Origin: Sphaerodactylus townsendi
Lineage: Eukaryota
Assembly: GCF_021028975.2 (NCBI RefSeq)
Contig: NC_059436.1
Coordinates: 35,340,001-35,404,000, forward strand
DNA length: 64,000 bases
Direction: 5' to 3'
Part shown: piece by piece, positions 48 to 59,285 of the stretch
How the letters are laid out: each line of letters begins with the position of its first letter
How positions within the stretch are numbered: position 1 is the stretch's first letter
Translations under genes and position numbers: made by a program
Notes under the pieces: generated by a model
What the model was told of the DNA's origin: nothing
What the model saw: only the letters and a program-made list of their open reading frames with translations
Database searches by the model: none

Positions 48-3784
<3,737 letters not shown>

Positions 3785-7200: not shown

Positions 7201-7801
7201 TTTGAAACCTACATTTCTTAAAAGGCACTACACAGTCTACAGTTGTAAGCACTCCGGAAGAATGAATCCCATGGGAGGAGTTTATGGGGAACCTTTGGGC
7301 CTAAATGGTTAACTAAAGCCTCTGGATTTTTGCCTCCAAAAGTCTGTAAATGTAGCCATAGCAACCCAAGAAGTAGAGCTGAAGGCATTTTCTCACTCCA
7401 GGTCACTACAAAAAATGCTATTTGTTATCTGTAAGAAATACATACCATTTATACAGTTTCAAATGTTCAAAGAACACCTCATGCATAGATTGTCTTGTTG
7501 AAATCCTTAAAACAACTCTAAGGATGGTTACTATTATTATGTGTATCCCCCAAAACATTTTTCATAGTCCTATGACAACACATAGGGGTTATAAAGAAGA
7601 CACATTGATGTTCCTTGAACACATGTGCAAAGGATATCCGGAAGACAGAAAGTTGAAGGGCACCTGGCTTAAAGAGAAAAGACATTGTTTTAATGTGAAG
7701 GCCTCTTGAGCAGAACGCAGCTTGCTGGAGATATTTCTTGTACAAGTTTCCATAGCAAAAACTTCTTGCACCTTCAATGTTTGTCACTGGGGCACTGCCT
7801 C

Positions 7802-10800
7802 TTAATTAATTTCTTCATAAAAATGCTCCTCATTTCTGTTGAATATAGGGGGAAAAACATTAATTCTGCATCTGTCAATTCCTGAAAGTCCCAAGAAGAA
7901 AGGCTAATGCTTTTGTTCATCACTGGGATTCACCATAAAAGGACCTGCAAAAATGCATGTCCGCATGGAACACAAACATGATATTTCCCAAAAGTTTGTA
8001 CTAAACCAGACTTGAGAAAGACTGCAGCAAAGCTTAAAGAAATATGGAAAGTGGACCATTAAAGGATGATGGCATGTGGATACTGCAAAAAACACAAACA
8101 TGCCCCAGCTCAGACACCGACCTGGAGCAAAAACTCCATGTGGAAGCAGCCTTTTGAGAATTTTTGCTAGTGTGATGGTTTATTGCTATGCAAAACAAAC
8201 CAACGAAGCCCTGCAGTCCTGTGATGCACTAACTCACCCTTTCGGTTGCTCCTCAAGGGAACCAGACACATTAGCCCTGGGGAAGGAAAAAGCAGACAAG
8301 TGTTAAAACAGGGTGGGGTTTCTTGCCCATCTGGCTGCACAAGGAGTTTGATGTGACAGGCAACCCAAATTTAGCCCAGGGAGAGAAGAGATCACTGTGA
8401 GGACTCCAACACTGGAGGGTATGCAATTTAACAAGCAGGAGGGGCTTCTTTCTCTAGGCATTTTTCCCTGATCAGCTAAATGGGAGTCCCCAGCCCTTGA
8501 ATGCTGTAAAGGTGAGCTGGTGATTCTGTATACCTTTTCTGAAGACTTGGGCATGAAACACAGGGTTGGATCCTACCATCCATCAATAATGAAGAATGAG
8601 GAGGAGAGTGGAATACAAGGAAGATCCATGCCCCTCATGCCTGCAGCTCTGTGGGGTTGGATGTCTGCCATACCATATCATGGCTCTATATATTTCTTAG
8701 TTGCTTTGTGGGAATTGGCTAGGTGGAGGTTAAGCATGGGAACATTGTATATATACAGACCCAAGACACTCAGTGCCCCAGCCTTCCCAGAAACCTGGAA
8801 GCCACCTTCCTGCACACAGATTCCAATTTGGTTGGAAAGCAGAATTTCTGCATGTTCACCATCGCATCAGTCACAGTTCACCAAGCGCACAAGAAGGTAC
8901 ATTTTTTGTCACTAAAAGCTGTCAGACTTTCTTAAGTCTGTTATATTTACAGTGTCTTACACTACAGGAAGATTCCTAGGGTAGAAGAATCCCTTCATTC
9001 CCCGTGCTTACACGGATTCAGCCTGTGGTTCCTCAGTAGTTCCATAGGAAGTCGAAGGTTCACGAATGGATGCATATATATGCTCTGGAGAGGGGCTAGA
9101 ACACAAGGATAAGGGTGAGGGAGAAAGTATTATTTTACACTCACACCATTGTTATAAAGATAACTAATATTTAACTCTGTCATCATAGATATCCCACTAA
9201 CTTTTGCTCATACAAGGATACACAACTCTGAGGGTGTCCAGGTACATTCCCATTTTGAACAGTCCTTCATAGGCTACCTGACGGCAACATTAGCTTTTAA
9301 CATCCCTTGTTCCAAAAGACACACAGTTTCAGCCACACTACACAGATAATGGTTTCATAACAATTGATTAAAAAACCCTGTAGGATAACGTGCACTAACA
9401 TTTTAAGCAGACAATGCCCTAAACACTTTCTGAAGGTATCATTCCACACAAAGCCTTTGAACTCTCCATGCGGCAGAGAAAAGGAGGGCACATGCCAGGC
9501 AATCAAGCATTAGCTTTGACAAGCCATAAAATGAGGCACACAGTTGGTTGGCCTGCAAAAAAAATGCTACAAAGAGGCCAGCCTCCTATTACCAAAGTAC
9601 ATCACTTTATTCACAAAAAACCCCACAGAGTCTGAATTGCACTTCACACAATAATTACCAGGTAAAAACTATCTAGATGCTTACAGTCAAAATCCTTTAA
9701 AATGGGGCACAACTGCCTGACAAGTATCAGAGGTAGAGAACTGGCTTAGAATGCAAAAAGGCCTCTGGTATCTTCAGTTGAAAAGATCTCAGGTAGTGCT
9801 TGGAGAGAAAGAACCTCTCTCTGCATGAGAACCTGGACAGCCACTATCTGGAGAGGCTCAGTGCTCAGTGGCAGGGCACTTGCTTGACATACAGAAGTCC
9901 CAGGTTGAAGCCCTGACATCTACACTTAAAATGAAGCCACAGCTAGACTCTGTCCAAAACAACAGAAAGCTGCTGGCTATCAGAACAGACAACACTGAGG
10001 CCCCTTCCGCACTTGCATAATAATGCTCTTTCAATCCACTTTCACACTGGTTTGCAAGTGGATTTTGCTATTCCGCACAGCTGCAAAGTGCATTGAAAGT
10101 GAATTGAAAGTGTATTATTCTGCATGTGTGGAAGGGGCCTGAGTTAGATGGCCCAGTAATGAAGTTTCGTTTGAGTGCTTCTTTTTGCTGACAGAATGCA
10201 ACTTTTTGGAGCCACAAATTATCATCCCAGCTGTATATGGTCAATCAGGGAGTTCTTGAACAGGCGTCTTAGCAAGACTGTCCTCTCATCTTATTTGTCA
10301 CACTCACCTAAAATGTGGTGCCAAATTCATACTGGTGTAGGCCTTCTCAGGAGTGGATCTAGAATGACAAGAAACCAATTTCAAGGGTTGCAGCAGTAAG
10401 GTTCCACCAATGGCAATAAGCAAGACCGGGTGAAGCAAGAAAGTGGGAGTTCTGAGTTGGGCATAAGGTTGCTCAGGAAAACTGGAATGTTGATGTTGGG
10501 AGTTTCAGTGGATTCATCACATCCAAACACGCTTTCTCCTCTTGGAGCTTTTGTGTTCACAGCTCCTGCCCTCTGTTTTACAATCAGCGCAATCATTTTA
10601 TCCATGACGTGATGATTTTCTGGCTCATTTTAATGTTGATATATCAGCATTTTTAGCACACCGCATTGTTACAGGGGTTTGGAAACCACTTCCAGAATTT
10701 TTATAGTGGAATGCACTATGTAAACTACATGAAAACGCACACATACAACATTTACTTATCCTTCTGAGAAGGGCTCTCAGCCTACACAAACAATTTCACA

Positions 10801-13800
10801 CCCCAGATGAGTTTTCCCAGGTAGTTAGAAGAAGAGACACGTATCTCACATCTTCACCAATGCAGAAAAGAAACCTAGGTTTTGTCAGTGTGTCCATCTA
10901 AAGCCATCTCTTAGGACTCTAACTAGTCATTTCCACTTCTAAGACAAGCCCTATATTCTGTTAAAATATCCTATGGGAGATATACGCTGGGGAAAAATAT
11001 CTTCCCTTCCTTAGGATTTGGACTTGCCAAACTATCAAAATTAATTTTAAAAGTTTTAATCTTTCCTAACAGAAGATGGGGGGGGGGGGGGGCTTATTTG
11101 CACCCAAGCATGGTCAAAGTGCCAATAAACAAAGCTCTGGGAATCCTAATGGCCATCCAGGCCAGAGACAATAAAATGGCAAACTCATACCTAATCTGGA
11201 ATTGGGGGGGGGGGGGGGGCAGTTCAAGAGGCTAGAGTATATTTTCCTAAAGTCCTCAGGAATGTTTGACCCATAAGAGGCAGGCAAACAACGGAAATAC
11301 AATCTTTTTGAGTGGGATCCATTTTGGCAGATTCCATCTGCAGAAAGCTCTCACACTTGAGCTCCATCTTGGTGGCTCCCACTGCCCATATGGAACAAAA
11401 TGCAGCTTGCCTGGACAAAGGCCCCTTCTGCACATGCAGAATAATACACTTTCAATTCACACCTGTTTGCAAGTGGATTTTGCTATTTCGCACAGTAAAA
11501 TCCAGCTGCAAAGTACAGTGAAAGTGGATTGAAAGTGCATTATTCTGCATGTGCGGAAGGGGCCAAAGACTCCCAGGTAATGGGAAGCTCTTAAACAAAC
11601 TGTATCTTTATAGAGTCTCTGCTTAGAACAAGATCAACTGGGGCATGTATAGGGGCTGAGGGACAGAGATCACATGTTTACACCTTTTCTTTGTATTCTT
11701 TGATCAATCTGCTGCTGTGCAGTGCTGTATGTGTGTGGACTTTATACTTTAAACAAATTCTTTACTATTTTCTGTGTACTACATAGACCTCTACAGTTTC
11801 AGCACTCTATTTAAAACAGAGGCCAGGGGAAGGAAGGTGGTCAGTTGCTAAATCATTACCTCCCTAGAGGCATGCAAGTACAGTAAGCTATCCCCACAGT
11901 AACAGTCACCGGGTAACAGGACACACAGACACTAAATGGAGCCTTAGAATGGCAATGCAGGAAGGAAAGCTGGAAGTAGTGTCCTTCTCAGTGGGTAATT
12001 CCTAATGTAAACAGAGTGGCAGCATACCAAAGAAGAAGCAAGAGAAAAACACCTCAAAGGGCTGAGACAACAGCATGTCTCCAAGCAGAGACTTCCTATG
12101 GTTGCTGGGTGCCTAAACACCTCAGAGAGCTAAATGGAGTGGCATTGGCGGGTCAGTGGGGTCATTCTGCCACCTATGCAATGGGTGAACACAATAGAAA
12201 GCACAAGTTTCTGTTTGAGAGGCAGAACTGGTAAAATCTGGAGCGTACTGTTAATGCCTATGGATCTTTTAAAGCCTTCCTGTGGAAACTCCAAGTTTTT
12301 TTTCTCTCCCACTCTCAGTATATTAATTGCATTAACATGCTTTACTCTGTTAGGCTGCAAGTACGTAGCTACCAACTGGCTGAATTAAGGCTGTGTGGCC
12401 TGGCCTGCTACCCTCACTCAGCCAGCTATTATTTAGTTTTCTATTTCCTGTCTTGAGAACATGCTGAACTATTCATACCGAAAACAATGGAGAATTTAAT
12501 ATTGTTTTGACCACTGTGAATATATCAAAGATTCTGTTGCCTGGCTTGCAATAGTGTCAGGTCATTCTGCCCTGATTTTATTACTCATCATTCCAATGGG
12601 AAGTAGGAACCATTTTCTCCCACTCATATCCAGAGGGGATGGACTGTGGCTTAGAGCACCTGCTTTGCACACAGAAGGTTCCAGCTTCGGTAAAGGGATC
12701 TCTGCCGCCATGTATTGGAATAGGATGTTCTTTGCCTGAGACTCCCGAACAGCCACTGCCAGAAGGTGCACTGAGCTACACAGCCTAACAGTCTAGATTG
12801 GTAAAGAGCAGCTTTATAGATTCCTATTGGAGAGTAGCTATGTCTTAGTAGTAAAACACACATATTGCAAGTAGGAAGTCGCAGGATCAATTCAGCAGGT
12901 GCTGGTACAGAACTTTCTCTGCCTGAGAGCTTCAGACAATGCACAGCTAAAAAAGATCAGCAGTAGCTTCCTACTGAGGGGATAGGGTGGGGTAAAAATC
13001 TAACATAAAGACAAAACATGCAACTGACCAGCCTTTCAGCAGGGAGATACAGCAACAAGCCCAAACATTTTATGCCTCAAAGTTCACCCAACACCTTAAC
13101 ATTCTTTCAGGCTGTGACCAAGTTCCCTCGATGTCCCCCTCCCTCCAGCACCCTCACTGGGTGGTAAAAGAACTATCCCCTTACTGGAGTGTTGTGGGGT
13201 TTCCGGCCTGTAAGACCGTATTCCAGTAGCATTTTCTCCTGACGTTTCACTTGTGGCTGGGTTAGAACCTCTGAAGACGCCAGCCACAGATGCAGGCGAA
13301 ACGTCAGGAGAAAATACCCGGAAACCCCACAACACTCCAGTGCAGAGGCGTAGCAAGAGGGGAAAGCACCGGGTGCACCGGTGCGTCCTATGCCCCCACC
13401 CTAGAATGCCCTGCCACACCACGTCCCTGGAATGCCCTTGCCGTGCCCCCACAGGGGCATGCACCCAGTGTGTTGCGCCTACCCCCTTGGAGCTACGCCT
13501 CTGCTCCAGTGATTCCGGCTGTGAAAGCCTTCAACAATATCCCCTTGCTATTCTGACTTACGTGGCTGGCTCCTGTGTTCCTTCAGCACGGATTCTGAAA
13601 TCACAGAAAGCACATCTCACTGCAACCACTTGCTGACTGCAATAAAGACTGTTTCCACACTGTGATGATTCTCCATGCAGTTTTCATTACCACTGAGAAT
13701 GCAGAGGAATTCACAGCAGAAACAGAGGACCCATGTAGTTTCCCCTGTGGTTTCCTTACCTTATCCTCAACCTCAGCCATGTTCCCATAAGATGGCATTT

Positions 13801-16800
13801 CTTTCTGAACTATGAAAGCTGGAAATTCAGAGGTGCCAGCAAATCATGGGAATGGATCATTGTAATGTCATTGGGCCATAATGCTCTTGCAATTGTTAAT
13901 TTTTTAAACAACCACAAAAATGCTGTCTTGTGTTGGCTGGGGGGGGGGGGCAATGGCGGTGGTGGGAGGCAGAGAAAAAGAAAATATGTTTTGTAATGTT
14001 ATGGATTGGTTTGTTTAAATTTGTTTAAATTTACTGGGGGTTTGTATGTTTTTATCTTTGGCTGTACACCACCCAGAACCCTTCCGGGNNNNNNNNNNNN
14101 NNNNNNNNNNNNNNNNNNNNNNNNNNNNNNNNNNNNNNNNNNNNNNNNNNNNNNNNNNNNNNNNNNNNNNNNNNNNNNNNNNNNNNNNNNNNNNNNNNNN
14201 NNNNNNNNNNNNNNNNNNNNNNNNNNNNNNNNNNNNNNNNNNNNNNNCTTCAAAACCATGCACCTTCCTGTCCACAAAGCATGAAAAGGCACTAACTGCA
14301 GTCTCTCCCAAAAGATTGTTTCAAACTAGGATAGGGAAAGATTGCAGCAAAGAAAGACCAAAACCAGGTTTTCCCCTAGATACACAACCTTAATGTGGAA
14401 ACTACCAAAGTCTGCTTTTATCCCTCAGGCTAGCACTATCTTGTCAGTGTGGTGTAGCAATTACCATATATACTCATGTATAAGTCGAGTTTTTCAGCAC
14501 ATTTTTTGTGCTGAAAAAGCCCCCCTCGACTTATACGAGTCAGCTGAATTTTAAAAAACATTTTAGGGTTTTTATTTTGTCGGTCACTAGGGGGCGCAGT
14601 TTTTAGGCTAGCGGCACCAAAATTTCAGGATATCATCAGGTGACACTCCTGATGATACCAGCCAAATTTGGTAAAGTTTGGTTCAAGGGGTACAAAGTTA
14701 TGGACCCCCAAAGAGGGTGCCCCCATCCCCCATTGTTTCCAATGGGAGCTAATAGTAGATGGGGCTACATTTTGAGGGTCCATAACTTTGGACCCCTTGA
14801 ACCAAATTTCACCAAACCTGGGTGGTATCATCAGGATAATCTCTTGCTGATACCAGTCAGGTTTGGTGATGTTTGGTTTAGGGGGTCCAAAGTTATGGAC
14901 CCCAAAGGGGGTGCCCCATCCCCCATTGTTTCCAATGGAAGCTAATAGTAGATGGGGCTACATTTTGAGGGTCCATAACTTTGGATCCCCTGAACCAAAC
15001 TTCACCAAACCTGGGTGGTATCATCAGAAGGGTCTCCTAAAGATACTCTGAAATGTTGGTACTGCTAACATAAACATTCCTGATCAAGGAAGCAGCGTGG
15101 TCCTAGACAACCCAGCAGCAACACCAGTACTACAGGCATCACATACCTTAAGCAGATTGTCCTTCTGGATCAGATTCATGTTTCTAATTCAGCAAAAGGC
15201 AGAACTCTGTTTTCCACAGAGACCAGCTAGACACTTATGAAAAGCGCACAAGCAGGACGTGAAGATTAACTTTCCCAACCCCTAGATCATGTGCACCGTT
15301 TGGCACTCAAAAGTGGACTGCCTTTAAAAATGGAAGGCTCACTCTTTGCTATTTTGACTAATCCATTGATAAATCTACCCCTCTGTGAAACTGACTGCTC
15401 TGCATTATCTCTGTACCTATTGGGAAAGAGGCTGGCTTGTCATGCTGAAAAGGTAGGAGTCTCTATCTTCTGGGGGGGTGGGGGCGGGGAGAGGATCCCA
15501 GGTGTTCTAAAAAAATAGGCCTCTGTAAACCCCCACCCCCTCAACAGGGAAAGAATATGCTCCCAAATAACATAATATTGCTCAAAGAACCCTTGGTATT
15601 TGATTCCAAGTTCAGAAAAAGCAAGTGCTTTAGAAGTCACAGGTCTCTCCCACTCCCATGCCATCTTGTCCTTCCAGCCCACCTGGGACCAGGGTGTAGC
15701 TCTTTAGGATCCACATATGAACTCTCTTCAGCCCTGCAATGACAAAAGAGAGTCTTCAGTGCAGAAGCAAAAGACCAGGTAAAGTAGCTTACAATGTCAC
15801 ATTTCCTTTTTCACTTATATGAGCTGAGCAGGTTATGCAAGCCATCGGCTTGTAATGAAGTTACAGATCTGCCCAGCTTGGGTTAACCCGAAAACTCTAC
15901 TTCATTTATCTCAATTGCCAATCATATGGTTGGACAGAAGAAAGCAACCAGAGCTAAGGGTGCATTGGCCATTAGGTTCACAGGGAAAAGTGGTGGGATC
16001 TCAATGGCCTGGGGGCTGCCCCTTTCCTAGGGTCATTTCCAGGCCAAGAGAGGTATGGCTCTTGCCCTGCCTGGGGTGGGTGGCAGCTGCTGCAAACTGG
16101 TGCTGATAACGTGACAACAAAACAAAAAAGAAGCAACATTTACAAGCAGTATAAAAATTAAAGATTTTCACATGGACAGTCATTTACAGCATTCGTCTAC
16201 ACAGCATGCTCTCAAAATACATCAACTAGACATGCATGCCCTATTCTCATTTTATTTATATATTCAGTTTTTCTTGGGTTTGACCAGCAGCCAACACAAG
16301 AAAGGAAACTATGGTGAAATGGTAAGCGCAGAGGCATAGCTCCAAGGGGGCAGGGGGGTGCGCGACTGGGAATTCTGGGGTAGAAAATGCAATGGCAAGA
16401 AATTCAAAAGGACCCTTAAAGATGGTTCTTCAGTTTCTTGGCCCCAAGCCATGAACAACAGTTTTAATAATCACAGTCAAGTGTAAGCATAGAAGCTGCT
16501 TAAACCTTTATAATCATGGGGCAGTCATACTACACAAACAAGTACTTTTCTCTTTTTTTATAGCCTCGTACTTGGAAATATGCAAGCAACCAGAGGTGTA
16601 GTAAGGGGGAAAAGCACCCAGTGCACTGGTGTGTCCTCTGCCCTGCCACGCCCCTGCCATGCCCCACAGGGGCATGCGCCCAGTGCGTCGTGCACCCCCC
16701 GGTCTCCTTAGAACTACGACTCTGCAAGCAACACTAGTTAAAGAGCAAAAAGCAGCCAGGCTCTAATGGTCACAGGCTGGGTCTTGAGCACCCCAAGACA

Positions 16801-19800
16801 TGGCTATACAGTACCTGTAACTTTATTTAAATGAAATTTTGCTTACTTTAATTGATGTCTGTTACAGAAATCCTCTTTTTTTTTCCAGCTCAGAGTTTTG
16901 GTAAGTTTTAATTTTAAAAACCCTAACTCCCAACAAGCCCTTCCTGTTCCAGCTGCGACAGACTAAAATACAACCGCTACCGACTAAAAACAGAAAAGTA
17001 GAAAGATTTGTTACTCACTCCATTACTGATTTCATCGTTTTGTATGGAGGAGACTCTTTTGGCATCACATAAATGCGCTCTGATGGACGGCGTCTGCAAT
17101 CACAAACAGCTGGTCTAAGTGCCCTCCCATACTCAGCCTCTCGTGAGGTCACCACACAGGTGTCGAACACAACTGCTCAAAGAGGCTATTTAGTTGACTC
17201 CCGGACGATGGATGCCACAGATCCATTCCGCGAATGGTGGTATTTTCCTGCAGACCAGGGAGGCATCCCCGAGCACAACAGGCTCCCAGGTTGGGAAGGC
17301 CAGGAAGACCCCCTCAGGGAATCAATACAGCCTCTGGGGCCACGTAGATGCTTGACTCTGCTCTGTTATGAGGCTACTGTAAACTCTGCTCCCTGGTGCC
17401 ACCGAACCCAGAGAGAATGGAACTGCAAAAGGCTTCATTCCTAGATACATTCTGGTTCAGCACACAGACACACCCCTAACTGAGATCTTGGGAATCTGTC
17501 ACATTAACACAGGTTAGTTTCTAGATTTCATGGTTGTAAAGAAAGACTAGAAAGTGTGTGGGCAGTGCCTGTGGAAATCTCAGAAGTCAGAGCAGAAATT
17601 CAGCAGGTTCCCTGCAATTATGGTAACAATACAGCTCCACACCCTACATTCACTCTTGCCATCTCCCTGATGCTGGCAGGGGATGATGGGAACTGCAGCC
17701 CATAACATATGGAGGGCCGCGAGTTTGGCACCTATGCCTGGTGTGATCTGTTGAACAACATAAACAAACATGTGCACATCTATTCAAAGGGCATATTTTT
17801 TTCAGGAAGCTTTTCACAGTGCAAAATTCAGATTATTATTATTCTGAAATACAGAAATAAATTGCCCACCGCCAGACCTGCTGCGGCTGGTGGTTTGGCA
17901 TATGTCACTTACGGGACAGGCGGGACGGACTTTTTGGGAGCAAGTGATTCTTTTCTCTCTTTTTTTTCTTTTTTCTCTCTTTTCCTTGGAGACAAGACAA
18001 AGACAGCCGCTGTGACTACAGCTCTGGGGGAACGGGCTACAAAACCAACCAGGATTTTACTGCTCTGATATATCTCTGGGCCCCAGATTAACATGCTCAC
18101 TACTTTAAAAGGGCTCCTAAATTAAACAAAACAGGTGGGCATCTACAATAGAGCTACTAAAAAAAAGGTTTAGTAGTAGCTCAACTCACTCCCTGATCTG
18201 CCACCCCAGGAGAAGGGAGTTTACCTCATCCTGCATTGTTGCCACGTGCAGTAGCCACTGGTACCCAGTCCTAGGAGCACAAGCGAGATAGGAAGAGCCA
18301 GATCAGAGCACAGGTCCCTTTGTGCCTGCATCCTGTTTCCAGCATTGGCTAGCCAGATATCTCCAGAAGGCCACAAGTAGGGCATAAAGCAATAATCCTT
18401 CCCTTAAATCCTTCCCAATAGGCCATGCTGGCAGCAATCAGGGACTGCTGGGAATCGTACTCCATGAACATCCGGGGCGCCAGAGTTGGACACCCCTGCC
18501 TTAAAGTTATCCCATAGGTTAGTGGTTCTCAACCTGGGGGTTGCGACCCCTTTGGGGGTCGAATGACCCTTTCACAGGGGTTGCCTAAGACTCTCTGCAT
18601 AAGTGTTCTCCATCTGTAAAATGGATAAATGTTAGGGTTGGGGGTCACCACAACATGAGGAACTGTATTGAAGGGTCACGGCATTAGGAAGGTTGAGAAC
18701 CACTGCCATAAGTGATACTGTCAAGCTGCCTCTGAACACACACACGATCTTAGCCAAAAGGTCAAGAAGTGATTGCTGCCTTTGAACACAGGAGTTTCCC
18801 TTTGCCATCATGGCTAATAGCTGCTGGCAGACTTGTTTGATTTGGTCAACTCCGCTATTAAAGGCAGCTTACTGAAAATAAACCTGCAGACATCATAAGC
18901 AGCAGAAAGAGTTGTAGGGCCAACAGCTCAATGGTAGAGCTGATGCCTTGCATTAAGGAAGTTCCAGGTTGAACCCAGTTTTAAAAGTTCCTTGCGTAGC
19001 AGAACGTGGCTGCCAGAGATTTTGGGAAACTTCTGACAATAGCAGGGTGCTGGGGTAGGGGACGGACCAATAGCCTGATAAAGAGTTACATGTTCAAGGA
19101 GCACTAGCAAAAGGGAGAGGATAGTTAAGGGTCTCATCAAGAGCAGCAAGGAGTAAAAAACTTTTCCCGCTAAAGAACAGGAGCGTGAGCCATCACTGCA
19201 CTGGGGACCCACTCCAGGCAGCACAAGGGCCCTGATGTAACAAAACCCAGGGAAATGGGAAGCTTCTCTTCTTTGAAGCCTGCAAAGACTCACCAGTGTT
19301 TCTCTACCAAGCGCAGGATGATGATGGCTATGAGCAGCAGAACCAAGGTGGAAAAGAAACCTAAGACAGCCAGGGAGCTCACAATAGCCACCAGCGTACT
19401 CTTGCTCAACACCTCAGGGCAAACACATGTTGTCCGTGATGCTGCGACAGAAAGGGGAAGGGCGCGTATGAGAAACCATTCGCCCAGTCCAGAATTCCCA
19501 AAGCCTTTCCTTCTAACGTTGAAGCCAGCACAACTCTTCAAACTTTTTCTGTTCCCAATCTCCATATGATTCCCAGGCAACCCAGAGCATTCACTCCAAA
19601 TCAACTTGCTCTCCTCTGAGCAACTGAGGAGGGCACAGTATCTCATACATTTACGCCCCCAGAACCCTGCTCCCCTCCCCTCCACAGCCAAATGGCTGAT
19701 TTTGGAAAAGAGCGATGTCTTACCTGGTAGCAAGGCCTGCCGGTTCCCAACTAACATCGCTTCGGAATCTTCGGGGAACTATGGATGAGAGCATTGATTT

Positions 19801-22800
19801 AGTTCACTATGACATTGTGGCTCCATAGCAACACAGCTTGACAGAAGAGTTCAGTGGTCAAATTTGTGGCTGGCCAGTCCAAATGTTGGCATTATTTATT
19901 TGTTTAAAACATTTTAATGCCATCTTGACCCCAAGTCAGTGGTCAAAACGTTGAAACACATTTTAAAATGTCTATAAATAAAATGACAAAAAGAATTCAA
20001 CAAAACACAAAGATGTAGATGCACTTAAATAGGAAGGAGGGTCGATGAGAGAACACTAAACAAAGCACATTTTCAATCACTGGTGCAAGCCAAAGATAAA
20101 GGGGGACAAACACATCTCCCTGGTGAGGGAATTTCTCAGTTTCAGTGCCACTAATGAGAAGATTCTTTCTTGGGCTCATTCCGCACATGCAGAATAATGC
20201 ACTTTCAAACTGCTTTCAGTGCTCTTTGAAGCTGTGCGGAATAGCAAAATCCACTTGCAAACAGTTGTGAAAGTGGTTTGAAAACACATTATTTTGCGTG
20301 TGCGGAAGGGGCCTTGGATTACTACACATCTAAACTTAGATGGCAAGGACTGCAAAGATCACTGTAGTAGCTGGGTAGGTTCATATGGGAATAGGTGGTC
20401 TTTAAAGGATAGCAGTTGTAAGGACAGTTCTTTGTTTGCCCTCAGAGATCTGCTGCCAGGCAAATTCAACACACCTAGGCTGGAAGCACATTAGCACAAT
20501 GGTCTGATGAAAAACAAGGCTGCTAAATATTTCTGCCTGGGGGAGAATTCTTTTGTATTCTCTGTGTGTTCATGCAGCATTTTCAAGTGTTCCAAGCACA
20601 TCACATCAGTGGGACAGTATCATTATCCCTATATCAGGCTGCATTCACAGCAGAAGCAAAATTCAAATCCAGGGCTTTCTGCTGTGCCATTTAGTCTTTT
20701 GGTTTCTGCGCTACACAAGCTCGCAGTTTAAAATTTCTCCAGCCACAGTTATTCCTTATTTACCTTGAACTACCAATTGCCTCCGGACTCCTGCTCAGCC
20801 CATGCACAGTGGATTTAAAGTGACACTCAAACAGTATCATTTCCATACTCACCTTCCTTACCATCCTTACTGATCTATGGACAATATTTTTACTGTCTTT
20901 GAATTCATCTGAAAGGGTACTAATTGGGTGTCCTTTTGCTGATGGTTCTTGAGAATCAAAGCCATGCTCTTGCACTCTAGAGGTCTTGGCCCCATTCATA
21001 TTTGCTAGAAATCACAGACAGAAGATTCAGATTTGGTTAAGAGTCAACAGAGGGATAATCTGGTCCCTCCTATGGTTACTGGTTATAAACACTGAGCCAT
21101 CTGTATAAGACCTAAGACATAGGGCTCCCCATAACCTAGTGTTCTCACCAGTGCTTTTCAACACATATATAAAGCCACTTAATTAGATTGTCTGCAACTG
21201 TAGAGTTGGCGAGATGGCGAGAACGCACACTATGTAAGTTTTTTCTTACGCTTTCAAGGAGGGTAATGTTGGCCAGAAAAGCTGATGCTCTGGAGGTGAT
21301 CGACTTCACAGGTGGATCTAAGATTTGTCATCCGGTGGATCATGTAACTAGGAATTGTGTTGGAACTAACCTTACAGATAGAAAAATGGGTTGGGACTAT
21401 CTCTATTGGATTTAAAACCTGCCCTTTTTTCTAGACTTTGCTGATCTAGCTACAGCAGTTGGTTTCTGTGACCTCAAGGCCACTGCAACACATTATACAT
21501 GGGGCTGCCCTTGAAGATTAGTCATCTCTGATTTGGGATGATGCTACTTTTTTAAAAAGCAGATGTGGAGTCTACACATTTGACCCTTTCTTCACACAGT
21601 CATTTTTCCTAACTGTTATATGCCTTCTTAATGTTTGCAAGGAGGATGCAAACAATCTATTCCAAAGTGAGCAGTTTAGTTGTCCATATGGGGTCTAGGT
21701 TTAAAAGCCTCATCTGCAGCTATTTCACAATCCTACCTCTCACATAACCAGAAAAGGACAACCATCTTAGCTGCAGTTTTACCAGGCGTATTCAGTTGGA
21801 TATATTGCCCAATGCTTTTTACAATGTTCTGATGGTGTTTAACAATTAAATACGAATAATTTAGCATCAGGATCAAACTACCTGCTTGGTTAGAGAATTG
21901 TAGTTAGAACCCACCAGGTGACTCAGCTCCACCATTAAAAATATTGAGAATAACTAGTCTTTTTCTCAAATAAATTATGGGAAAGAAGCTTACTTGGGGC
22001 TCCATATCAATACCTTGATATTTCATTTGAGGTAGAGAAGCATGACATGGATTTATAGCCCTTTCCACTAGGATTCAAATAACCACTCAGCTACTTCTCA
22101 GAGTCCATGGGAGCAGGTAGTGGTAGTGTTCAGAGCTCTTTTTTTGAACTATTCATTTGTTTTATAGGCTGCCCTTTTCTGGTTAACTCAGGGAGGCTTA
22201 CAACAGCTACCATTACAATAAATAAATTCAATAAAACCATTAATAACAATCATATCTTGTCACCATTCCAAAATTTGAGGGATGACATATCATCCATATG
22301 CCATACCATCATCCATAGTCACATCAAAAGGGAGGGAAAGGGGATGGGGAGAAGAAAGGGAGGCCAGCTAGATGGATCCTGCCATAGTCTTAATCAGAGG
22401 CCTGGTAGGCTCTGCAAAGCTGGGATGGGTCCCACAGGGTCCTGATCTTACTTGACAGAGAATTCTACTAGACTGGTGCCACAGCCTTAAAGGCCCTGGT
22501 GTTGGTTGAGGACAGCCAGACAATTTTGGGCCAAAGATCATCAATATTTTGTTGTTTGCTGAACACAAGGCTCTTGGAGAAACATTCTGGGAGAGGTGGT
22601 CTTGCAGATATCTTACAAGCACACACACACACGGGCGCGCGTAGCAACCCAAGAGGCTTTCAAAAATACCAGCTGTGATAGGGCATTGGGAGGAGTGTTG
22701 CTATTCAAAACAAATGTAATCAAGAACGCCACTGGGCATAACCAAGCACCTGGATACACCTAAAACAGCTCTTTGGATCACTGAAATTATTCAATTATAT

Positions 22801-22876
22801 TAGTGAAAGGAGAGATCAGCACCTTAAAGATTAACAACCACAACAGGGCAACTTGTTTACATCTGGAGCAACACAT
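7802..22876 (-). CDS. Predicted multi-exon TMEM210-like single-pass type I membrane protein with a tyrosine-motif-rich cytoplasmic tail (about 267 aa on the minimal path)
   Basis: Phase-consistent GT-AG exon chain: 22823-22876 (MCCSRCKQVALLWLLIFK, signal-like; tentative), 21783-21828 (tentative), 20853-21004, 19724-19778, 19294-19441 (SRTTCVCPEVLSKSTLVAIVSSLAVLGFFSTLVLLLIAIIILRLVEKH), 17913-17984, 17019-17093, 15683-15733, 13562-13594, 9012-9095, 7802-7835 (NEEHFYEEIN-stop). Total 804 nt with no internal stop. Optional exons at 15147-15183, 13760-13804/13809/13818, 10756-10781 and 8534-8572. The CxC-TM segment resembles human TMEM210 as I recall it, and TMEM210 lies next to ANAPC2 in human. 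Confidence 0.65.
9999..10139. mobile_element. PIF/Harbinger-like MITE, about 140 bp
   Basis: TIR GGCCCCTTCCGCAC...GTGTGGAAGGGGCC with a 3-bp TSD TGA. Same family as the copies at 11420, 20173 and 63299. Confidence 0.8.
11420..11564. mobile_element. PIF/Harbinger-like MITE
   Basis: Same TIRs, 3-bp TSD AAA. Confidence 0.8.
13268..13308 (+). ncRNA. Minimal type I hammerhead ribozyme motif (Penelope-associated)
   Basis: CCT-CTGAAGA-C-GCC(13-nt loop)GGC-GAAA-C-GTC-AGG. Conserved CUGAnGA and GAAA core boxes, stem I CCT/AGG, stem II GCC/GGC, palindromic ACGT in place of stem III, and a GUC cleavage triplet ending at 13305. Confidence 0.7.
13343..13503. mobile_element. hAT-type MITE nested in the Penelope remnant
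   Basis: Perfect TIR CAGAGGCGTAGC/GCTACGCCTCTG. 8-bp TSD CTCCAGTG (13335-13342, 13504-13511). Confidence 0.85.
14089..14247. other. Assembly gap (159 N)
   Basis: Run of N. Confidence 1.
14464..14540. mobile_element. Tc1/mariner (Tc2-like) MITE end
   Basis: TA followed by CCATATATACTCATGTATAAGTCGAG, with the inverted copy CTCGACTTATACGAGT. Resembles CCGTATATACTCG-type termini. Confidence 0.5.
14584..15070. repeat. Tandem array of about 194-bp internally palindromic units, probably from a non-autonomous DNA transposon or Helitron-type element
   Basis: TATCATCAG recurs at 14631, 14826 and 15019. Each unit contains the inverted pair gtttggtt...aaagttatggaccc / gggtccataacttt...aaccaaa. Confidence 0.8.
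16591..16724. mobile_element. hAT-type MITE, same family as 13343
   Basis: TIR CAGAGGTGTAGT/ACTACGACTCTG with an 8-bp TSD CAAGCAAC. Confidence 0.8.
18520..18705. mobile_element. SPIN/URR1-type non-autonomous hAT transposon
   Basis: TIR (T)AGTGGTTCTCAACCT / AGGTTGAGAACCACTG. 8-bp TSD CCATAGGT/CCATAAGT. Internal segments gacccctttgggggtcgaatgaccctttcacagggg and ggggtcaccacaacatgaggaactgtatt match the URR1/SPIN MITE consensus as I recall it. Confidence 0.8.
18741..18773 (-). pseudogene. U2 snRNA 5' fragment (tailless retrocopy)
   Basis: Minus strand reads ATCACTTCTTGACCTTTTGGCTAAGATCGTGTG versus U2 ATCGCTTCTCGGCCTTTTGGCTAAGATCAAGTG. Flanked by a 16-bp duplication GCTGCCT(C/T)TGAACACA (18725-18740, 18775-18790). 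Confidence 0.8.
19294..19441 (-). CDS. Transmembrane-encoding exon of the TMEM210-like gene
   Basis: Strong acceptor (cccttcccctttctgtcgcag) and donor (CTG|gtgagt). 148 nt, phase 1 to phase 2. Encodes CxC followed by a hydrophobic stretch of about 26 aa. The next exon starts with a basic stop-transfer run, KREKKEKKERK. Confidence 0.8.
20173..20313. mobile_element. PIF/Harbinger-like MITE
   Basis: GGCTCATTCCGCAC...GTGCGGAAGGGGCC with a 3-bp TSD TTG. Confidence 0.8.
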
Positions 22877-25040
22877 TTGATGATCTTTTATGATTTTTTT
22901 CAGTATATTTCTTCCTGGCTCTTGACATCTACTGAAGAGGTCTTGTTTTTGTATTCTTGCATGAGGGTTAAGAACAGGGCCTCCTGACATGGCACCCATT
23001 TTGTGGACACTGTTGCTGGAGTATGAAGGTGAAAGGAGGTTCTCAGGATATTAAATTCTGCATCCAAAACCAGCCTTCTGTGATTACAATGGAATCATGG
23101 AATACCCACTGTTCAGTGCACTTCTATGGCCAGCGCACTGATTCTGCACAATGAATAACCAAAAGCCCCCCAGCCCTTGAAAGCTGTGTGTGTAGAAACA
23201 GACAACCCATAGCCATTTGCTAAAAAAACCAAAATCCTTACACAGTCTCAACAACTACTGAAAAAGGAACCACTAGCCAAACTACCAGAGCAGCACTCAC
23301 AGGAAGACGAGGCAATGACGCTTATGGAGAATACCAAGGCACCCAGACAAGCTAACAGCATAATTGGGATGTTAGACCAATTCCCACACCCACCAAAGAA
23401 TTCTGACTTAGAGGATGCTTGCAGGGCAGAGCTAGACAGAAGGCCTGTGTGGATTCTGGGTCTAACTGTGACAGCACAATAGCCTGGAATGTTTGCCAGC
23501 CAATAGGCTGAACTTGCCCCAAGCCTCTACCATCCCCTCCCCAGGTTTTCAGTACTAGGGTAGATTAGCATGTGCTCTTAAAAGCCTGTTGGTTTGCTAC
23601 ATGCAAAGATAAGGGGATACTGCAGCTACAGGAGAAACTGACTTTTTTCTTTTTGCTAGCTAGCCTAAAGAGAGAATTATAGTGACACCCAACATGCCCT
23701 ACAGCCAGTAGCAGGAGTCTGACCCCAATGAATCTTTGTTGGGAATACAACACATCCTTGCTGTGGCCCCAGTGGCAGAAACTGAGGCGGAAACAACTTT
23801 AAGGCACACTCCTTCCTTTAACAGAACTGTTAATCCAGTATTATCCTCACAACATTCCATCTCCCAATCACCATAGAACTATAGAAGTCCTGGCCAGCCT
23901 CACTTCAGCTAGAGGCTGGCTAATAGGTTTTCCTAACTGCACAGTATCTGAGGAAAGGCTCCTCACAGAAGCAGAATTTTTGCCCTGAGTTTTGCAGATC
24001 TGAAGCCCCCAAGGATTGAAGTTGGGCACTTATACACACAAAACACATACCTTACCTTTGAAGTCTGGTTCTGCTGAGTTCCTTGGCACAGACAGGTGGA
24101 GGCGGGACACTTCTTATGCTGTCCAAAAGTCTCCTCAGTAGTTAAACTATCTAGAAACATTTCCCCACAAGTATGAGGGCTAGAATCTTTTTTTCTTTTA
24201 AAATAAGCAAACATTCAAGGAAGTCAGATTTGATTTCAAGGGATGCAGCTGAAGCAACTCAAAAGCACAATCAAGTCTGTGAAAAGGGTGTATCTTAAAC
24301 AGGACTCCTGTTTTATTATGAATAGAACCTGTGAACAAGAGAAATCCACTTACACAACAGAAAACTGTCTTGCCGCAACAGGCTACCCAACTGTACAATA
24401 TTTTAGGAAGGACTGGCAGAGGTGAAGAGAATAATGCTGTCCTCAACTGGTCTATTTTCACCTCTCCAATGGAACAGATGGATCTGCTTCCCCCCTACCC
24501 CCCATACAACCACTGACTGCATACTTTGCTTTGTTGTTTGCTATGAGTGGTGGACTACTCCCAGCCACCCTGTTCCTGTAATATCACACACAAGAATCAA
24601 AATAATTACAGCAGCAGCAGAAATGGTGACAGCAGCAAAATATCCTGAGTCAGGTGACAAATTTGGAACAAGCAAGGTGAAGGCCAGGCTGGCCATCTGT
24701 CCAATACAACTGAGTAAGAAATTGCAACATAATCCATACAAGCGCAGCCATTTCCATTTTATTATGAACAAGGGAGATGGGTCAAAAGAGGGCTTTCTCC
24801 AAGTCCCAAACCCTGCCTTGCTTGGGAGGGATTTCACAGGGTCCTGCACAATCCCTGTATCAGTGCCCAGCAGATTTCTTTTCCAGCCTCACAGAATGGG
24901 GCAGTACAAAGGCCAGTGCCAGAAAAAAACAAAGCCTCTGATGACACCACACATAGATGAGAACCACACTGCACCCTCTGGGGATGGGAGGTCATTGCAG
25001 TCAACCATAATGCAAAAGGAACTGGAGTCTGGAATAATGC

Positions 25041-28000
25041 TCAGTTGCAGCTCTTGGGCAGACGGTAGACGCCGCCAGAGTAGATGAGCTGCTGGTCTCG
25101 CACCTTCTTCTGGAGGAAACCCTGTAGCTCCTGGATGTCAATCTCTGTCACCATGGGGCCTGTCATCACAAAGATCTTGAGCATGCTGTGGATGCGCTCC
25201 AGTGATAGACTCTCCAGATTGGTCAGCATCGCCTGGATGTACGTCCAGAAAAGCTGCAAAGGGCATCAAACGAGAAGTCAAAAAATACAGAAGCTGCAGG
25301 CTATTTGCAGAAGGCTTGTACAGTGCCCTCCCAGTTGGAAGCCTAGCTTCATTTATCAAAGATACAGTTTCACAACAAAACACACACTCAGATGCACTCA
25401 TTCAATCAGTACTGAAAACAGCTCAATTTTGGTTCAAATGAAACAATCTTAGAAAAGGAGACATCAGATTTAGAAATCTTAGAAACAATCTTAGAAAAAG
25501 AGACCCCAAAACCATGCTTTGGACAGGGGCCAGCTTCTGCACTATAAAAAACATTTGCAGCCAGAAAACTTGAGCACTTATTTTTGGAATATGCTACACA
25601 GAATACATCAGAAATAGGCAAGACATGAATATCTGATGCTTTGTTCATACTGAGAAATCTCACTTTGCTTGGCATGCAGCCAGAGGGTCAAATGAGCTCC
25701 AGAACCTATCTGCAGTTGATCCAAGTGAGAAATTATGCCCCCACCCCCCGCCAACAACTAGGGCTCTGAGAGGACAAGGGCAGCACCTGCAACTCCTCCT
25801 CTTTCTGGTCAGCTTGTGAGGCCATGGCTGAATCGCCTTCTTCATCGCTGTCAATCAGTACCACTTTCTCCGCCCGGTCCTTCTGCTCCTCTTCAATCAC
25901 AGTGAATGTGCCTGGAGGTTCTTCCCGCAGCACACCCTGCTGCAGCCACAGGGTCATCTTGCGCCGGAGGGATGTCACAGGCACCTTCAGCACCTCACTC
26001 AACTCGTCCAAAGTCCATGTGCCTGAAAAGGGTCAAAGGACACAAGGGTTACAAGGAAACAGCCAGAAGCCAGGTCAAGGAATGTGCTTGTAGGGGAAGA
26101 ATCAGGACAGTGCATAGTTTTGCATGAAAGAAGCATCTCAGCTAGCAGGACTGGGAAAGATAATCTAGGTGAGACCCTTGAGAGCAGCTGCCCGTCAGGG
26201 TGGCTATAGAATAAAGGACCGGACAGACCAAATGATCTGGCTCTGAAGAAAGCAATGGTTTATAAACAACTCACACTCTGTTTCACACTTTGTATGCCCT
26301 CTAAGCTTGGATCACCTGTTCTCCTCAAGACACCCCTCGCCCACTCAAAGCCCTTTTATAAACCACTAGAACAGTAGCCCCCACCCTTTTGGGCCCACAG
26401 GCACCTTTGAAATACTGAAATAGGACGATGGGAACAGCCCCAAAATGGTTGCCAAACCTACCATCAGTCACACCATGAATATTATTGTGCTGTAGTGGCA
26501 GCTGTTGCCTAAGCAACTTTTTAAAAACACTGCACAGCCAATCAAATCTCCAGTGGCCAATAAGAAGCCCTACTGGGCAAAAGCCCCACTTTCTAAAAAC
26601 ACTTGGTGGGCACCAGGAAAGGTGAGTGTAGGCACCATGACGTCACAGTCACCTCATTGTGGACCCTGGCACTACAGCCTCTTCCACGCTATACCATGGG
26701 TTACAAGTGAATTCACTGCTGTGCAAAAACAGCTGCAACCCCTTCCTCCCAGCAGAGGGCAGCGGTGTATCGACATTGTGGAACTCACTCTTGTTTTGGA
26801 AGTACAAGATGATCGCTGCATGCACAGGTGAGACGGAGAGGGAAAGGGTGCGGTCCGCCAACTCCACATCCAGTTTCACTAAGCCCAGATGGTGCTTCCA
26901 GTTCAGTGTCCTCATGGCCTAAGAACAAATCAGGCAGAAAGGAATGCTCAGAAACCTGCCCCGCACATTTCGTCAACAGAAGAAAGACAGAGAAAAAGAA
27001 AAGGCAACAGCCAGAAAAAGCACCTGATCCCTGCCCCCTTCCTGGTGTAACACAGTCACTGGCTCCCTAGTGCTTATTTGCTTTAATCTGGAGCAATACA
27101 ACACTTCCGCATGCATGTGCAATTACCATTTGGAAATACGATGCCAGGAAACTGAGGGCTGGAAGTTACTCAAGTAGCACTGTTAGATGCAGGCAGCGTA
27201 AAGGGAAGAGGAATAGCTGGAAAAGCTGTGGTTACAACATGTCCTGAAGGCTGCCTGTCAATCTCCTGTTACATCATCTTGGTTTTCCTTCAAAGAGCTC
27301 AGGACAGTGGACATAATACTCCTCTTACCCTGCTCTTACGAGAAGCCTGCAAGGTGGGTTTGATTGAGAAGGGGCAAGTGGGCCCAAGGTCATCCAGCGA
27401 GCCTTAAGGCTGAGCAAGGAATAGGAACCTATATCTCCTCAGTCACTCTGACAGCTATACCAAGCCAGCTCTTATCAATGCACTGTCTACCAATGGTCAG
27501 GGATCTAAAGCAAAGCAGGGACATGTCAATCTTCATTAGATCATCAGGACAGCAATGGAAAGACCCAACTCAACTTGTCAAGGGGCCTGGCTATTGAATT
27601 AAGAACCTTCACTCAAAAAGGAGCAGCAGTGGCGAATTGGTTGAGAGCAAGTGCATTCTAATCTGAAGGAACCGGCTTTGATTCCCCGCTCTGTCGCTTG
27701 AGCTGTGGAGGCTTATCTGGGGAATTCAGATTAGCCTGTGCACTCCCACACACACCAGCTGGGTGACCTTGGGCTAGTCACAGTTCTTCGGAGCTCTCTC
27801 AGTCCCACCCACCTCATGGGGTGTTTGTTGGGGGGGGGGGAGAGCAAGGAGATTGTAAGCCCCTTTAAGTCTCCTACAGGAGAGAAAGGGGGGATATAAA
27901 TCCAAACTCTTTTTCTTCTTCTTCTTCCTATTGTTGTACAGTTGTCTATGCCAATAAAGGCTTGCTGCTGCTTCTTCTTCTTTTTCAACCCTCGCCAATT

Positions 28001-59159: not shown

Positions 59160-59285
59160 GGTGACGGCAAAAGCCCCCTCAGACACCCGCTTGCTCGGTG
59201 CCGCGCCGCCGCTCTGACCCGCCGCTCCTCTCGACTTCAGGCACCGGCAGCAGCGGCGGTGCCGCCCAGAGGGCAGACGACGGTG

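What the first reader, a model, noticed from the sequence alone, without database searches (positions are those of the whole stretch)
7802..22876. Hidden micro-exon gene: a TMEM210-like transmembrane protein with a multi-tyrosine signalling tail
Seen in sequence: a chain of small minus-strand GT-AG exons, mostly below the ORF-track cutoff, joins without stops. It gives a signal-like N-terminus, a short ectodomain (with RSVR, a possible proprotein-convertase site), CVC + TM helix, a basic stop-transfer run KREKKEKKERK, then ...SVPPVPRRPSERIYVMPKESPPYKTMKSVMEAEESSYVDPKELHPGPR...PSPEHIYASIREPSTSYGTTEEPQAESV...NEEHFYEEIN-stop. Established knowledge: YxxP is preferred by Crk/Nck/Abl SH2 domains, YxxM by PI3K p85 and pYEEI by Src-family SH2. 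EHIYA resembles EPIYA-type Src substrates. PPVPRR fits a class II SH3 ligand (PxxPxR). This architecture is typical of transmembrane adaptors such as LAT, PAG, SIT and TRIM. Human TMEM210, as I recall it, is short (about 147 aa) and lacks such an array. Inference: this is either a TMEM210 orthologue that kept or gained an adaptor tail, or an undescribed reptile transmembrane adaptor. The 5' exons are the least certain part.
Basis: partly seen in the sequence, partly recalled or inferred. Interest (0 to 1): 0.88.

Follow-up and report, generated by a model that had tools for sequence, protein, structure and literature searches.

The report
Squamate tyrosine-tailed membrane adaptor gene
The chain of tiny exons is a real gene, already in RefSeq as an unnamed gecko protein and conserved in lizards and snakes; it encodes a single-pass membrane protein whose disordered tail carries conserved docking motifs for Src-type kinases, but its function has never been studied.

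Summary
The window is from the gecko Sphaerodactylus townsendi. So the gene is not hidden, but it is undescribed in the literature.

Its start codon at 22876 is wrong. I found the true signal-peptide exon at 23361-23301, which RefSeq also lacks; it is conserved in Gekko kuhli. The assembly gap lies inside an intron.

Homologues were detected only in squamates, always between ANAPC2 and a tubulin gene. They share an identical exon plan: a signal exon, an ectodomain with an RxxR site, CxC plus a transmembrane helix, then phase-2 mini-exons that each carry one tyrosine motif.

Tail tyrosines are 88% conserved, against 20-50% for other residues. Also conserved are an [RK]xxPPxP SH3 ligand and a C-terminal HIYEE[VI].

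Similarity to TMEM210 is weak: below the Pfam threshold and limited to CxC plus the helix. Gene position supports it.

The most likely function is a Src-family kinase docking adaptor. This is inferred, not shown, and no RNA data were available.

The parts
23301..23361 (-). Exon S: start codon and signal peptide (MLLACLGALVFSISVIASSS), 61 nt, phase-1 gtgagt donor. Absent from the RefSeq models.
   Evidence: Found by a scan for Met + hydrophobic core + phase-1 donor. The orthologous exon is in Gekko kuhli L001 8272-8332 with the same length, phase and donor, and with conserved upstream letters. It resembles the signal exons of other squamates.
20853..21004 (-). Exon A: ectodomain, with the conserved R-x-[VIL]-R multibasic site (HRSVRMVRK) at its end. 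The RefSeq CDS starts at an internal ATG at 20999.
   Evidence: RRAVR[RK] in other squamates.
19724..19778 (-). Exon B: 55 nt, FPEDSEAMLVGNRQALLP.
   Evidence: A 55-nt orthologous exon is present in Gekko, Varanus and Anolis; it is 58 nt in Naja, and in Sceloporus it forms the 3' end of a longer 232-nt model exon.
19294..19441 (-). Exon C: CxC + transmembrane helix, 148 nt.
   Evidence: AF2 helix at residues 81-130 with pLDDT above 90. dN/dS 0.17 against Gekko. Pfam TMEM210 E 0.66.
17913..17984 (-). Exon D: polybasic run KREKKEKKERK and the SH3-ligand core KSVPPVP.
17019..17093 (-). Exon E: 75 nt, RRPSERIYVMP and PPYKTM (two tyrosines).
   Evidence: It is 75 nt in the three species whose model contains it and in Gekko; the Naja model lacks this exon.
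15683..15733 (-). Exon F: SSYVDPKELHPGPR.
   Evidence: the YLxxxELxPGPR motif is conserved.
14089..14247 (.). Assembly gap, inside intron F/G. Not coding in any model.
13562..13594 (-). Exon G: 33 nt, alternative (isoform X1 only), no tyrosine. The Gekko orthologue is 54 nt with GKYASV.
10308..10358 (-). Exon H: STPEKAYTSMNLAPHF (YxxM).
   Evidence: the E-x-E-Y-I column in other squamates.
9012..9095 (-). Exon I: PSPEHIYASIREPSTSYGTTEEPQAESV (two tyrosines).
   Evidence: no substitution in a congener about 2% diverged.
8238..8276 (-). Exon J: ANVSGSLEEQPKG, 39 nt.
   Evidence: one non-synonymous difference at 8275 in the congener.
7802..7835 (-). Exon K: NEEHFYEEIN + stop, 34 nt.
   Evidence: A 34-nt last exon encoding HIYEE[VI] was mapped in Sceloporus and Anolis; my mapper did not resolve the last exon cleanly in Varanus and Naja.
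7689..7694 (-). ATTAAA, a candidate polyadenylation signal 108 nt after the stop.
   Evidence: sequence only.

Best explanation
Shown:
- This is a real protein-coding gene of 12 coding exons (23361 to 7802, minus strand; about 284 aa with the newly found signal exon).
- It is conserved across squamates, always immediately 3' of ANAPC2.
- It encodes a type I single-pass membrane protein: a signal peptide; an unstructured ectodomain of about 85 aa with a conserved R-x-[VIL]-R multibasic site and an invariant CxC next to the membrane; one transmembrane helix; a polybasic stop-transfer run; and a disordered tail of about 145 aa.
- The tail is built from phase-2, frame-neutral mini-exons, each carrying one tyrosine motif. 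Exon skipping and exon duplication therefore reshuffle motifs without breaking the frame.

Inferred mechanism:
- The protein acts as a transmembrane adaptor that docks Src-family kinases.
- The conserved [RK]xxPPxP motif (RPLPPLP/RPLPPVP in several lineages) binds the kinase SH3 domain.
- The kinase phosphorylates the tail tyrosines.
- The C-terminal pYEE[IV], the optimal Src-family SH2 ligand and present in every complete tail (YEQV in Naja), holds the kinase by its SH2 domain.
- The other phosphotyrosines recruit further SH2 proteins: YxN/Grb2-type in most squamates, YxxM/p85-type in geckos.
- The CxC may give a disulphide-linked dimer, and the RxxR site may be cut by a proprotein convertase.

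It is probably the squamate counterpart of TMEM210.
For: Gene model:
- Exact match to the RefSeq isoforms.

Distribution and position:
- 14 homologue clusters in an exhaustive HMMER search. All named ones are squamate; two unnamed fragments resemble the squamate CxC+TM exon.
- Same neighbours (ANAPC2, the gene, tubulin) in Gekko, Sceloporus, Varanus, Anolis and Naja.
- Same exon plan and phases in four further species and in Gekko.

Selection:
- Gecko-gecko dN/dS is 0.46 overall and 0.17 for CxC + TM.
- Tail tyrosines are identical in 88% of cells and CxC in 100%, against 20-50% for other residue types.
- Conserved motif table.

Structure:
- The AF2 model has only one confident element, helix 81-130.

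Leads only:
- The nearest language-model clusters are the transmembrane adaptors SCIMP, GAPT, LIME1 and PAG, and poxvirus A36R, all below 0.9.

TMEM210:
- PF15195 hits in register in 8 of 15 members, best E 0.0061.

Background:
- The specificities of pYEEI, RPLPPLP, YxN and YxxM are established knowledge (Songyang 1993; Yu/Feng 1994), recalled from memory, not tested here.
- Transmembrane adaptor definition: PMC3342071.
Against: - No RNA run was available, so expression, tissue and the S/A junction are unverified.
- No phosphorylation or binding data exist.
- Many of the motifs also fit YxxPhi sorting signals.
- There is no cytosolic CxxC palmitoylation motif, and the ectodomain is longer than in classical transmembrane adaptors.
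- No Pfam adaptor family is matched.
- Tail dN/dS of 0.67 shows only weak overall constraint.
- The TMEM210 scores are below Pfam's cut-off (17.5 against 27 bits) and cover only CxC + TM.
- YxN motifs are absent in this gecko.
Confidence: 0.58

Rival explanations
1. A small membrane protein without phosphotyrosine signalling. The tyrosine motifs would be YxxPhi and acidic sorting signals that steer endocytosis or trafficking, perhaps in a testis-type role like mouse Tmem210.
For: YKTM, YASI, YEEI, YERL and YMTV all fit YxxPhi. Mouse Tmem210 is testis-enriched and dispensable for fertility (PMC9226692).
Against: There are seven to eleven tyrosines per tail, in acidic and proline-rich contexts. 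A conserved SH3 ligand and a C-terminal YEE[IV] are present in all lineages with a complete tail (YEQV in Naja). Several motifs (YLSA, YQNV, YVNM) are not YxxPhi.
Confidence: 0.2
2. A precursor whose functional part is the ectodomain. The conserved R-x-[VIL]-R site would be cut by a furin-like convertase to release an N-terminal (often acidic) peptide, and the tail would only sort the precursor.
For: The multibasic site is conserved at the end of exon A in all squamates, and upstream stretches are acidic in many species.
Against: The ectodomain is the least conserved part (dN/dS 0.71). The strongest conservation is in CxC + TM and the tail tyrosines.
Confidence: 0.1
3. A squamate-born gene unrelated to TMEM210. 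The CxC + TM likeness would be chance among short membrane proteins.
For: All PF15195 scores are below threshold, nothing aligns beyond profile position about 55 of 114, and the family members are not independent trials. No non-squamate hit appeared in the HMMER search.
Against: The hits share one register in several lineages, and for two proteins TMEM210 is the only family reported. The slot 3' of ANAPC2 on the same strand holds no other gene.
Confidence: 0.4
4. A chance chain of open mini-exons or an annotation artefact, with no real protein.
For: No RNA evidence could be obtained here.
Against: Frames, phases, splice sites and motifs are conserved from geckos to snakes.
Confidence: 0.02

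Closest known systems
TMEM210 (Pfam PF15195), mammalian small testis-enriched membrane protein
   Same: A signal peptide plus one transmembrane helix. CxC directly before the helix aligns in register with the start of the profile. The gene lies in the ANAPC2/SSNA1/TUBB4B block: cattle gene list in PMC6304683; immediate adjacency to ANAPC2 in human is from my own memory.
   Different: Scores are below Pfam's cut-off. Nothing matches beyond profile position about 55. The protein is twice as long. It has 12 coding exons against 4 in mouse. It has an added ectodomain with an RxxR site and a multi-tyrosine tail.
Transmembrane adaptor proteins (SCIMP, PAG/Cbp, LIME, LAT, NTAL, SIT, TRIM)
   Same: A single helix, no enzymatic domain, and a disordered tail with several conserved tyrosine motifs plus a proline-rich SH3 ligand, as in SCIMP and PAG. 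These are the nearest language-model neighbours (lead only).
   Different: No sequence membership in any of their Pfam families. There is a signal peptide and an ectodomain of about 85 aa. The cysteines are extracellular (CxC), not a cytosolic CxxC palmitoylation site. Expression in leukocytes is unknown.
Src SH3 + SH2 dual-docking substrates (p130Cas/Sin type) and poxvirus A36R
   Same: A class I RPLPPxP-type ligand combined with a pYEE[IV]/pYxxV-type SH2 ligand in one disordered chain. A36R is a membrane protein phosphorylated by Src (own knowledge; one search lists it as a neighbour).
   Different: No homology. This is a resemblance of motif logic only, and it is untested.

Membership tests
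TMEM210 (PF15195) | Score at or above Pfam's gathering threshold (27 bits) | tested here: not met
   Best is 17.5 bits, E 0.0061 (Sceloporus). The gecko exon C scores 10.9 bits, E 0.66.
TMEM210 (PF15195) | CxC followed by the single transmembrane helix, aligned to the start of the profile | tested here: met
   Hits run from profile position 1-3 to 41-55 in the five proteins listed individually and in the gecko exon C. 8 of 15 family members match at E <= 1.
TMEM210 (PF15195) | Cytoplasmic part of the profile (positions about 55-114) | tested here: not met
   No alignment beyond position 55 in any member.
TMEM210 (PF15195) | Gene directly 3' of ANAPC2 on the same strand | tested here: inconclusive
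   True for this gene in the window and in five other squamates. That mammalian TMEM210 holds this slot is from my memory; a cattle list only places it in the same 500-kb block.
Transmembrane adaptor proteins | Single helix, no enzymatic or folded domain, tail with several conserved tyrosine motifs | tested here: met
   The AF2 model has only helix 81-130 as a confident element. There are 7-11 tail tyrosines, 88% conserved.
Transmembrane adaptor proteins | Very short extracellular part (a few to about 40 aa) | tested here: not met
   About 85 aa after the signal peptide in the gecko, longer in other squamates.
Transmembrane adaptor proteins | Cytosolic juxtamembrane CxxC palmitoylation motif (LAT/NTAL/PAG/LIME/SCIMP subgroup) | tested here: not met
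   The geckos have no cysteine after the helix. Many other squamates have one Cys (several iguanians two, Hemicordylus none) inside or just after the inner part of the helix.
Transmembrane adaptor proteins | Sequence match to Pfam LAT, PAG, LIME1, SCIMP, SIT or GAPT | tested here: not met
   Only SIT at E 0.21 in one member, over the helix.
Transmembrane adaptor proteins | Tyrosine phosphorylation by Src/Syk kinases, SH2 recruitment, leukocyte expression | not testable with these tools
   No RNA runs were served for this species. No papers mention any of the six LOC identifiers searched.

The most novel reading that the evidence does not exclude
Squamates keep the full-length ancestral form of TMEM210: a disulphide-linked, convertase-processed membrane adaptor that docks Src-family kinases through an SH3 ligand and a C-terminal pYEE[IV]. 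Its tail is a set of frame-neutral, one-tyrosine mini-exons that alternative splicing and exon duplication rewire between lineages. Mammalian TMEM210 would then be a truncated remnant, and this would give the first functional clue for that orphan protein.
Probability: 0.3. Interest if true: 0.62.

Novelty: new member of a known kind. Interest (0 to 1): 0.42.

Why it matters
- It would add a lineage-restricted member to the transmembrane adaptor class, conserved across squamates from geckos to snakes and carrying textbook Src SH3 and SH2 ligands.
- It shows a clear case of signalling motifs packaged one per frame-neutral mini-exon.
- It corrects the RefSeq N-terminus of the gecko gene, which lacks the signal-peptide exon.
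- It offers a testable link to the orphan mammalian protein TMEM210.
- It is not a hidden gene: annotation pipelines already predict it in many squamates.

Tried and rejected
- **RNA evidence.** The run search returned only DNA-type holders, so splice junctions could not be checked. Read laying therefore served only to compare a congener about 2% diverged: exons K, I and G had no substitutions, J had one, there were no frame shifts, and exon H was not resolved in the printed rows.
Rejected.
It is in no model, and two substitutions in the congener fall there.
- **Profile search with the family alignment.** It was swamped: only 8000 candidates were scored and it returned only squamates, so it says nothing about TMEM210 or non-squamate kin.
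- **Atlas searches.** They gave only sub-0.9 leads.
- **Pfam on single tail exons.** Nothing.
- **Papers.** No paper mentions any of the six LOC identifiers searched.
- **TMEM210 comparison.** No tool could give me TMEM210 sequences, so no profile-profile comparison was run.
- **Joined models.** The joined corrected model with exon S was built only inside local scripts, for frame checks and dN/dS, and was not sent to any search or fold.
- **Complex prediction.** None was run, because no suitable kinase reference is offered.
Full report
**What is in the sequence**

I then searched with the unspliced ORF 19757-19293, scoring only its last 50 residues (the CxC + helix exon). This returned a 100% match to [quoted passage not shown]. 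The cluster also holds isoform X1 (262 aa) and a 206-aa UniRef entry. The window is therefore gecko DNA, and the gene is already in RefSeq, unnamed.

**The annotated gene model**

Mapping the RefSeq proteins back onto the window reproduces them exactly from eleven exons:

| Exon | Coordinates | Note |
|---|---|---|
| A | 20999-20853 | RefSeq CDS start |
| C | 19441-19294 | CxC + helix |
| D | 17984-17913 | |
| E | 17093-17019 | |
| F | 15733-15683 | |
| I | 9095-9012 | |
| K | 7835-7802 | |

- Exon H carries a further tyrosine motif (EKAYTSM).
- From exon D onward every intron is phase 2 and every internal exon length is a multiple of three. Any of these exons can therefore be skipped without a frame shift.

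**The assembly gap**

The Ns at 14089-14247 lie in the intron between F and G. No reading frame crosses them. The flanks align to Gekko kuhli in the same order and orientation, with a similar spacing. In Sceloporus the F, G and H equivalents follow one another with nothing in between; Anolis has a duplicated G-type exon there. A coding exon hidden in the gap is not needed, though it cannot be excluded. I did not look up the missing letters.

**The 5' end**

Joined to the acceptor at 21004 it runs into a stop.
- The stretch 23200-22148 has no counterpart in Gekko. I reject this start.
- Most other squamate homologues begin with a signal peptide that the two gecko models lack.
- A scan for Met + hydrophobic core + phase-1 donor found MLLACLGALVFSISVIASSS at 23361-23301, with a gtgagt donor.
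- Gekko kuhli has the same 61-nt exon, with the same phase and donor, and with conserved upstream sequence.
- Joined to the acceptor at 21004 it reads ...ASSSSNMNGAKTSRV..., in frame with exon A.
- The corrected coding sequence has 12 exons, 855 nt and 284 codons. The RefSeq start at 20999 is an internal methionine.
- This joined model was used only in local scripts.

**Relatives and position**

- An exhaustive HMMER search of 1.84 billion representatives found 14 clusters.
- All the named clusters are squamate and all are annotated as uncharacterized or hypothetical: Gekko, Sceloporus, Phrynocephalus, Phrynosoma, Anolis, Hemicordylus, Podarcis, Zootoca, Rhineura, Varanus, Vipera and Naja.
- Two further clusters are unnamed fragments from run assemblies, and they resemble the squamate CxC + helix exon.
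- In Sceloporus, Varanus and Naja the order is SSNA1(-), ANAPC2(+), this gene(+), tubulin(+), CMI2B/FAM166A(-). In Anolis the same order is seen, without SSNA1 in the fetched stretch. In Gekko only ANAPC2 followed by this gene falls within the fetched stretch.
- The window has the same arrangement: a tubulin C-terminal exon at 48-1040, ANAPC2 exons from about 25.7 kb (aligned to the Gekko ANAPC2 gene), and a taperin/phostensin-family exon at 57.2-59.4 kb.
- The exon plan is the same in Sceloporus, Varanus, Anolis and Naja: a signal exon with a phase-1 donor; an ectodomain exon; a 55-nt YPEDS exon (58 nt in Naja; part of a longer model exon in Sceloporus); a CxC + helix exon of 148-154 nt; a 75-nt exon with two tyrosines (missing from the Naja model); then phase-2 mini-exons of 45-111 nt. 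The 34-nt last exon was mapped cleanly in Sceloporus and Anolis.
- Isoforms in Anolis, Podarcis and the gecko differ by whole mini-exons. Anolis has duplicated the YQNL exon and Podarcis a PKTYSGAGGISSPV exon.

**Selection**

Between Sphaerodactylus and Gekko, splice sites and frames of exons S to F are kept. Nei-Gojobori dN/dS values:

| Region | dN/dS |
|---|---|
| All of S-F | 0.46 |
| CxC + helix | 0.17 |
| Ectodomain | 0.71 |
| First tail exons (D-F) | 0.67 |

- The tail as a whole is loosely constrained, but its short motifs are not.
- Across nine squamates with complete tails, the gecko's seven tail tyrosines are identical in 88% of cells and the two cysteines in 100%. Other residue types score about 20-50%.
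- Conserved motifs:
  - [RK]xxPPxP, which is RPLPP[LVI]P in Hemicordylus, Podarcis, Varanus and Vipera
  - PE[HR]xY
  - GYER[LI] (YKTM or YTTM in geckos)
  - Y-L-x-x-x-E-L-x-P-G-P-R
  - YQN[VL]
  - E-x-E-Y-I
  - K-Y-x-N
  - [ND]H[IFL]YEE[VI] at the C-terminus of every complete tail (YEQV in Naja)
- In the ectodomain, R-x-[VIL]-R followed by a basic residue is conserved at the end of exon A.
- In a congener about 2% diverged, exons K, I and G show no change and J shows one. This is weakly fewer than the roughly four expected.

**Structure**

An AlphaFold2 model built with the family alignment has a single confident element, a helix over residues 81-130 of the RefSeq protein (the membrane span plus the basic run). 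Everything else has low confidence. This fits a disordered tail that carries short linear motifs.

**What it most likely does**

The architecture matches the definition of transmembrane adaptor proteins: one helix, no enzymatic domain, and a tail of tyrosine motifs phosphorylated by Src or Syk kinases, with proline-rich SH3 ligands in PAG and SCIMP (PMC3342071).

The following specificities are established knowledge that I recall from memory, and they were not tested here:
- RPLPPLP is the classical class I Src SH3 ligand.
- pYEEI is the optimal Src-family SH2 ligand.
- YxN suits Grb2.
- YxxM suits PI3K p85.

One chain that offers both an SH3 and an SH2 ligand is the logic by which substrates such as p130Cas unlatch and hold Src kinases.

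I therefore favour a Src-family docking adaptor. The extracellular CxC may make a disulphide-linked dimer, and the RxxR site may be a convertase site. Every step after "the motifs are conserved" is inference.

A protein language-model search put SCIMP, GAPT, LIME1, PAG and poxvirus A36R nearest, all below the 0.9 level at which such hits mean anything. This is a lead only.

**Family membership**

- No Pfam adaptor family is matched.
- The cysteines are outside the cell rather than in a cytosolic CxxC motif.
- The ectodomain is longer than in classical adaptors.
- So the protein works like a transmembrane adaptor but is not a member of any named adaptor family.

For TMEM210:
- Pfam PF15195 is the family hit most often, by 8 of 15 members, always with CxC at profile position about 3 and running through the helix to position 41-55.
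- For two proteins it is the only family reported.
- All scores are under the cut-off (best 17.5 against 27 bits). The members are not independent trials. The cytoplasmic half of the profile is not matched.
- The gene fills the slot 3' of ANAPC2, which I recall TMEM210 occupies in human. A cattle gene list puts TMEM210 in the same 500-kb block as SSNA1, TUBB4B and LRRC26.
- Mouse Tmem210 has four exons, is testis-enriched and is dispensable for fertility.
- I put descent from a common TMEM210 ancestor at about 60%.

**Verdict**

- The gene is not hidden, its 5' end was wrong, and no function is shown.
- Nothing about any of these loci was found in the literature.
- Interest is moderate.

Noticed in passing
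window 23301-23361 (-); L001 8272-8332: The RefSeq models of Sphaerodactylus LOC125441491 and the Gekko kuhli model both start at an internal Met and lack the conserved signal-peptide exon. This is an annotation error worth reporting.
   Followed up: yes
L002 11123-11354: The Sceloporus model XP_042334433 contains a 232-nt 'exon' (TLLDVHYFLCVMLRINRC...) that ends with the usual 55-nt YPEDS exon. It looks like a retained intron or a wrong acceptor in that model.
   Followed up: partly
window 9889-10286, 11282-11679, 13073-13510: Introns hold very high-copy repeats: contig depths reach the hundreds of thousands to millions. Two copies at about 10050 and about 11520 lie in opposite orientation. 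These are probably SINE-like elements.
   Followed up: no
window 27774-28055 (-) and 49415-49759 (-); also L001 4401-4541: The same repeat-derived ORF tail (KKKKSLDLYPPFLSCRRLKGAYNLLALPP.QQTP.EVGGAERAPK.CD) occurs twice in the window and in the Gekko locus. It is a dispersed element shared by geckos.
   Followed up: no
window 48-1040 (-), 25.7-39.5 kb (-), about 40.5 kb (+), 57216-59387 (-): Flanking genes: a beta-tubulin last exon (Pfam Tubulin_C); ANAPC2 exons; an ORF with [11 protein letters not shown] that looks like SSNA1 exon 1 (not confirmed by Pfam); and a large taperin/phostensin-family exon. Compared with the human order that I recall, tubulin sits directly beside this gene in all squamates checked, which suggests a rearrangement.
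   Followed up: partly
L001 17980-18033 against window 13562-13594: Exon G is 54 nt with a tyrosine (GKYASV) in Gekko kuhli, but 33 nt, tyrosine-free and alternatively skipped in Sphaerodactylus. This is a motif exon in decay.
   Followed up: yes
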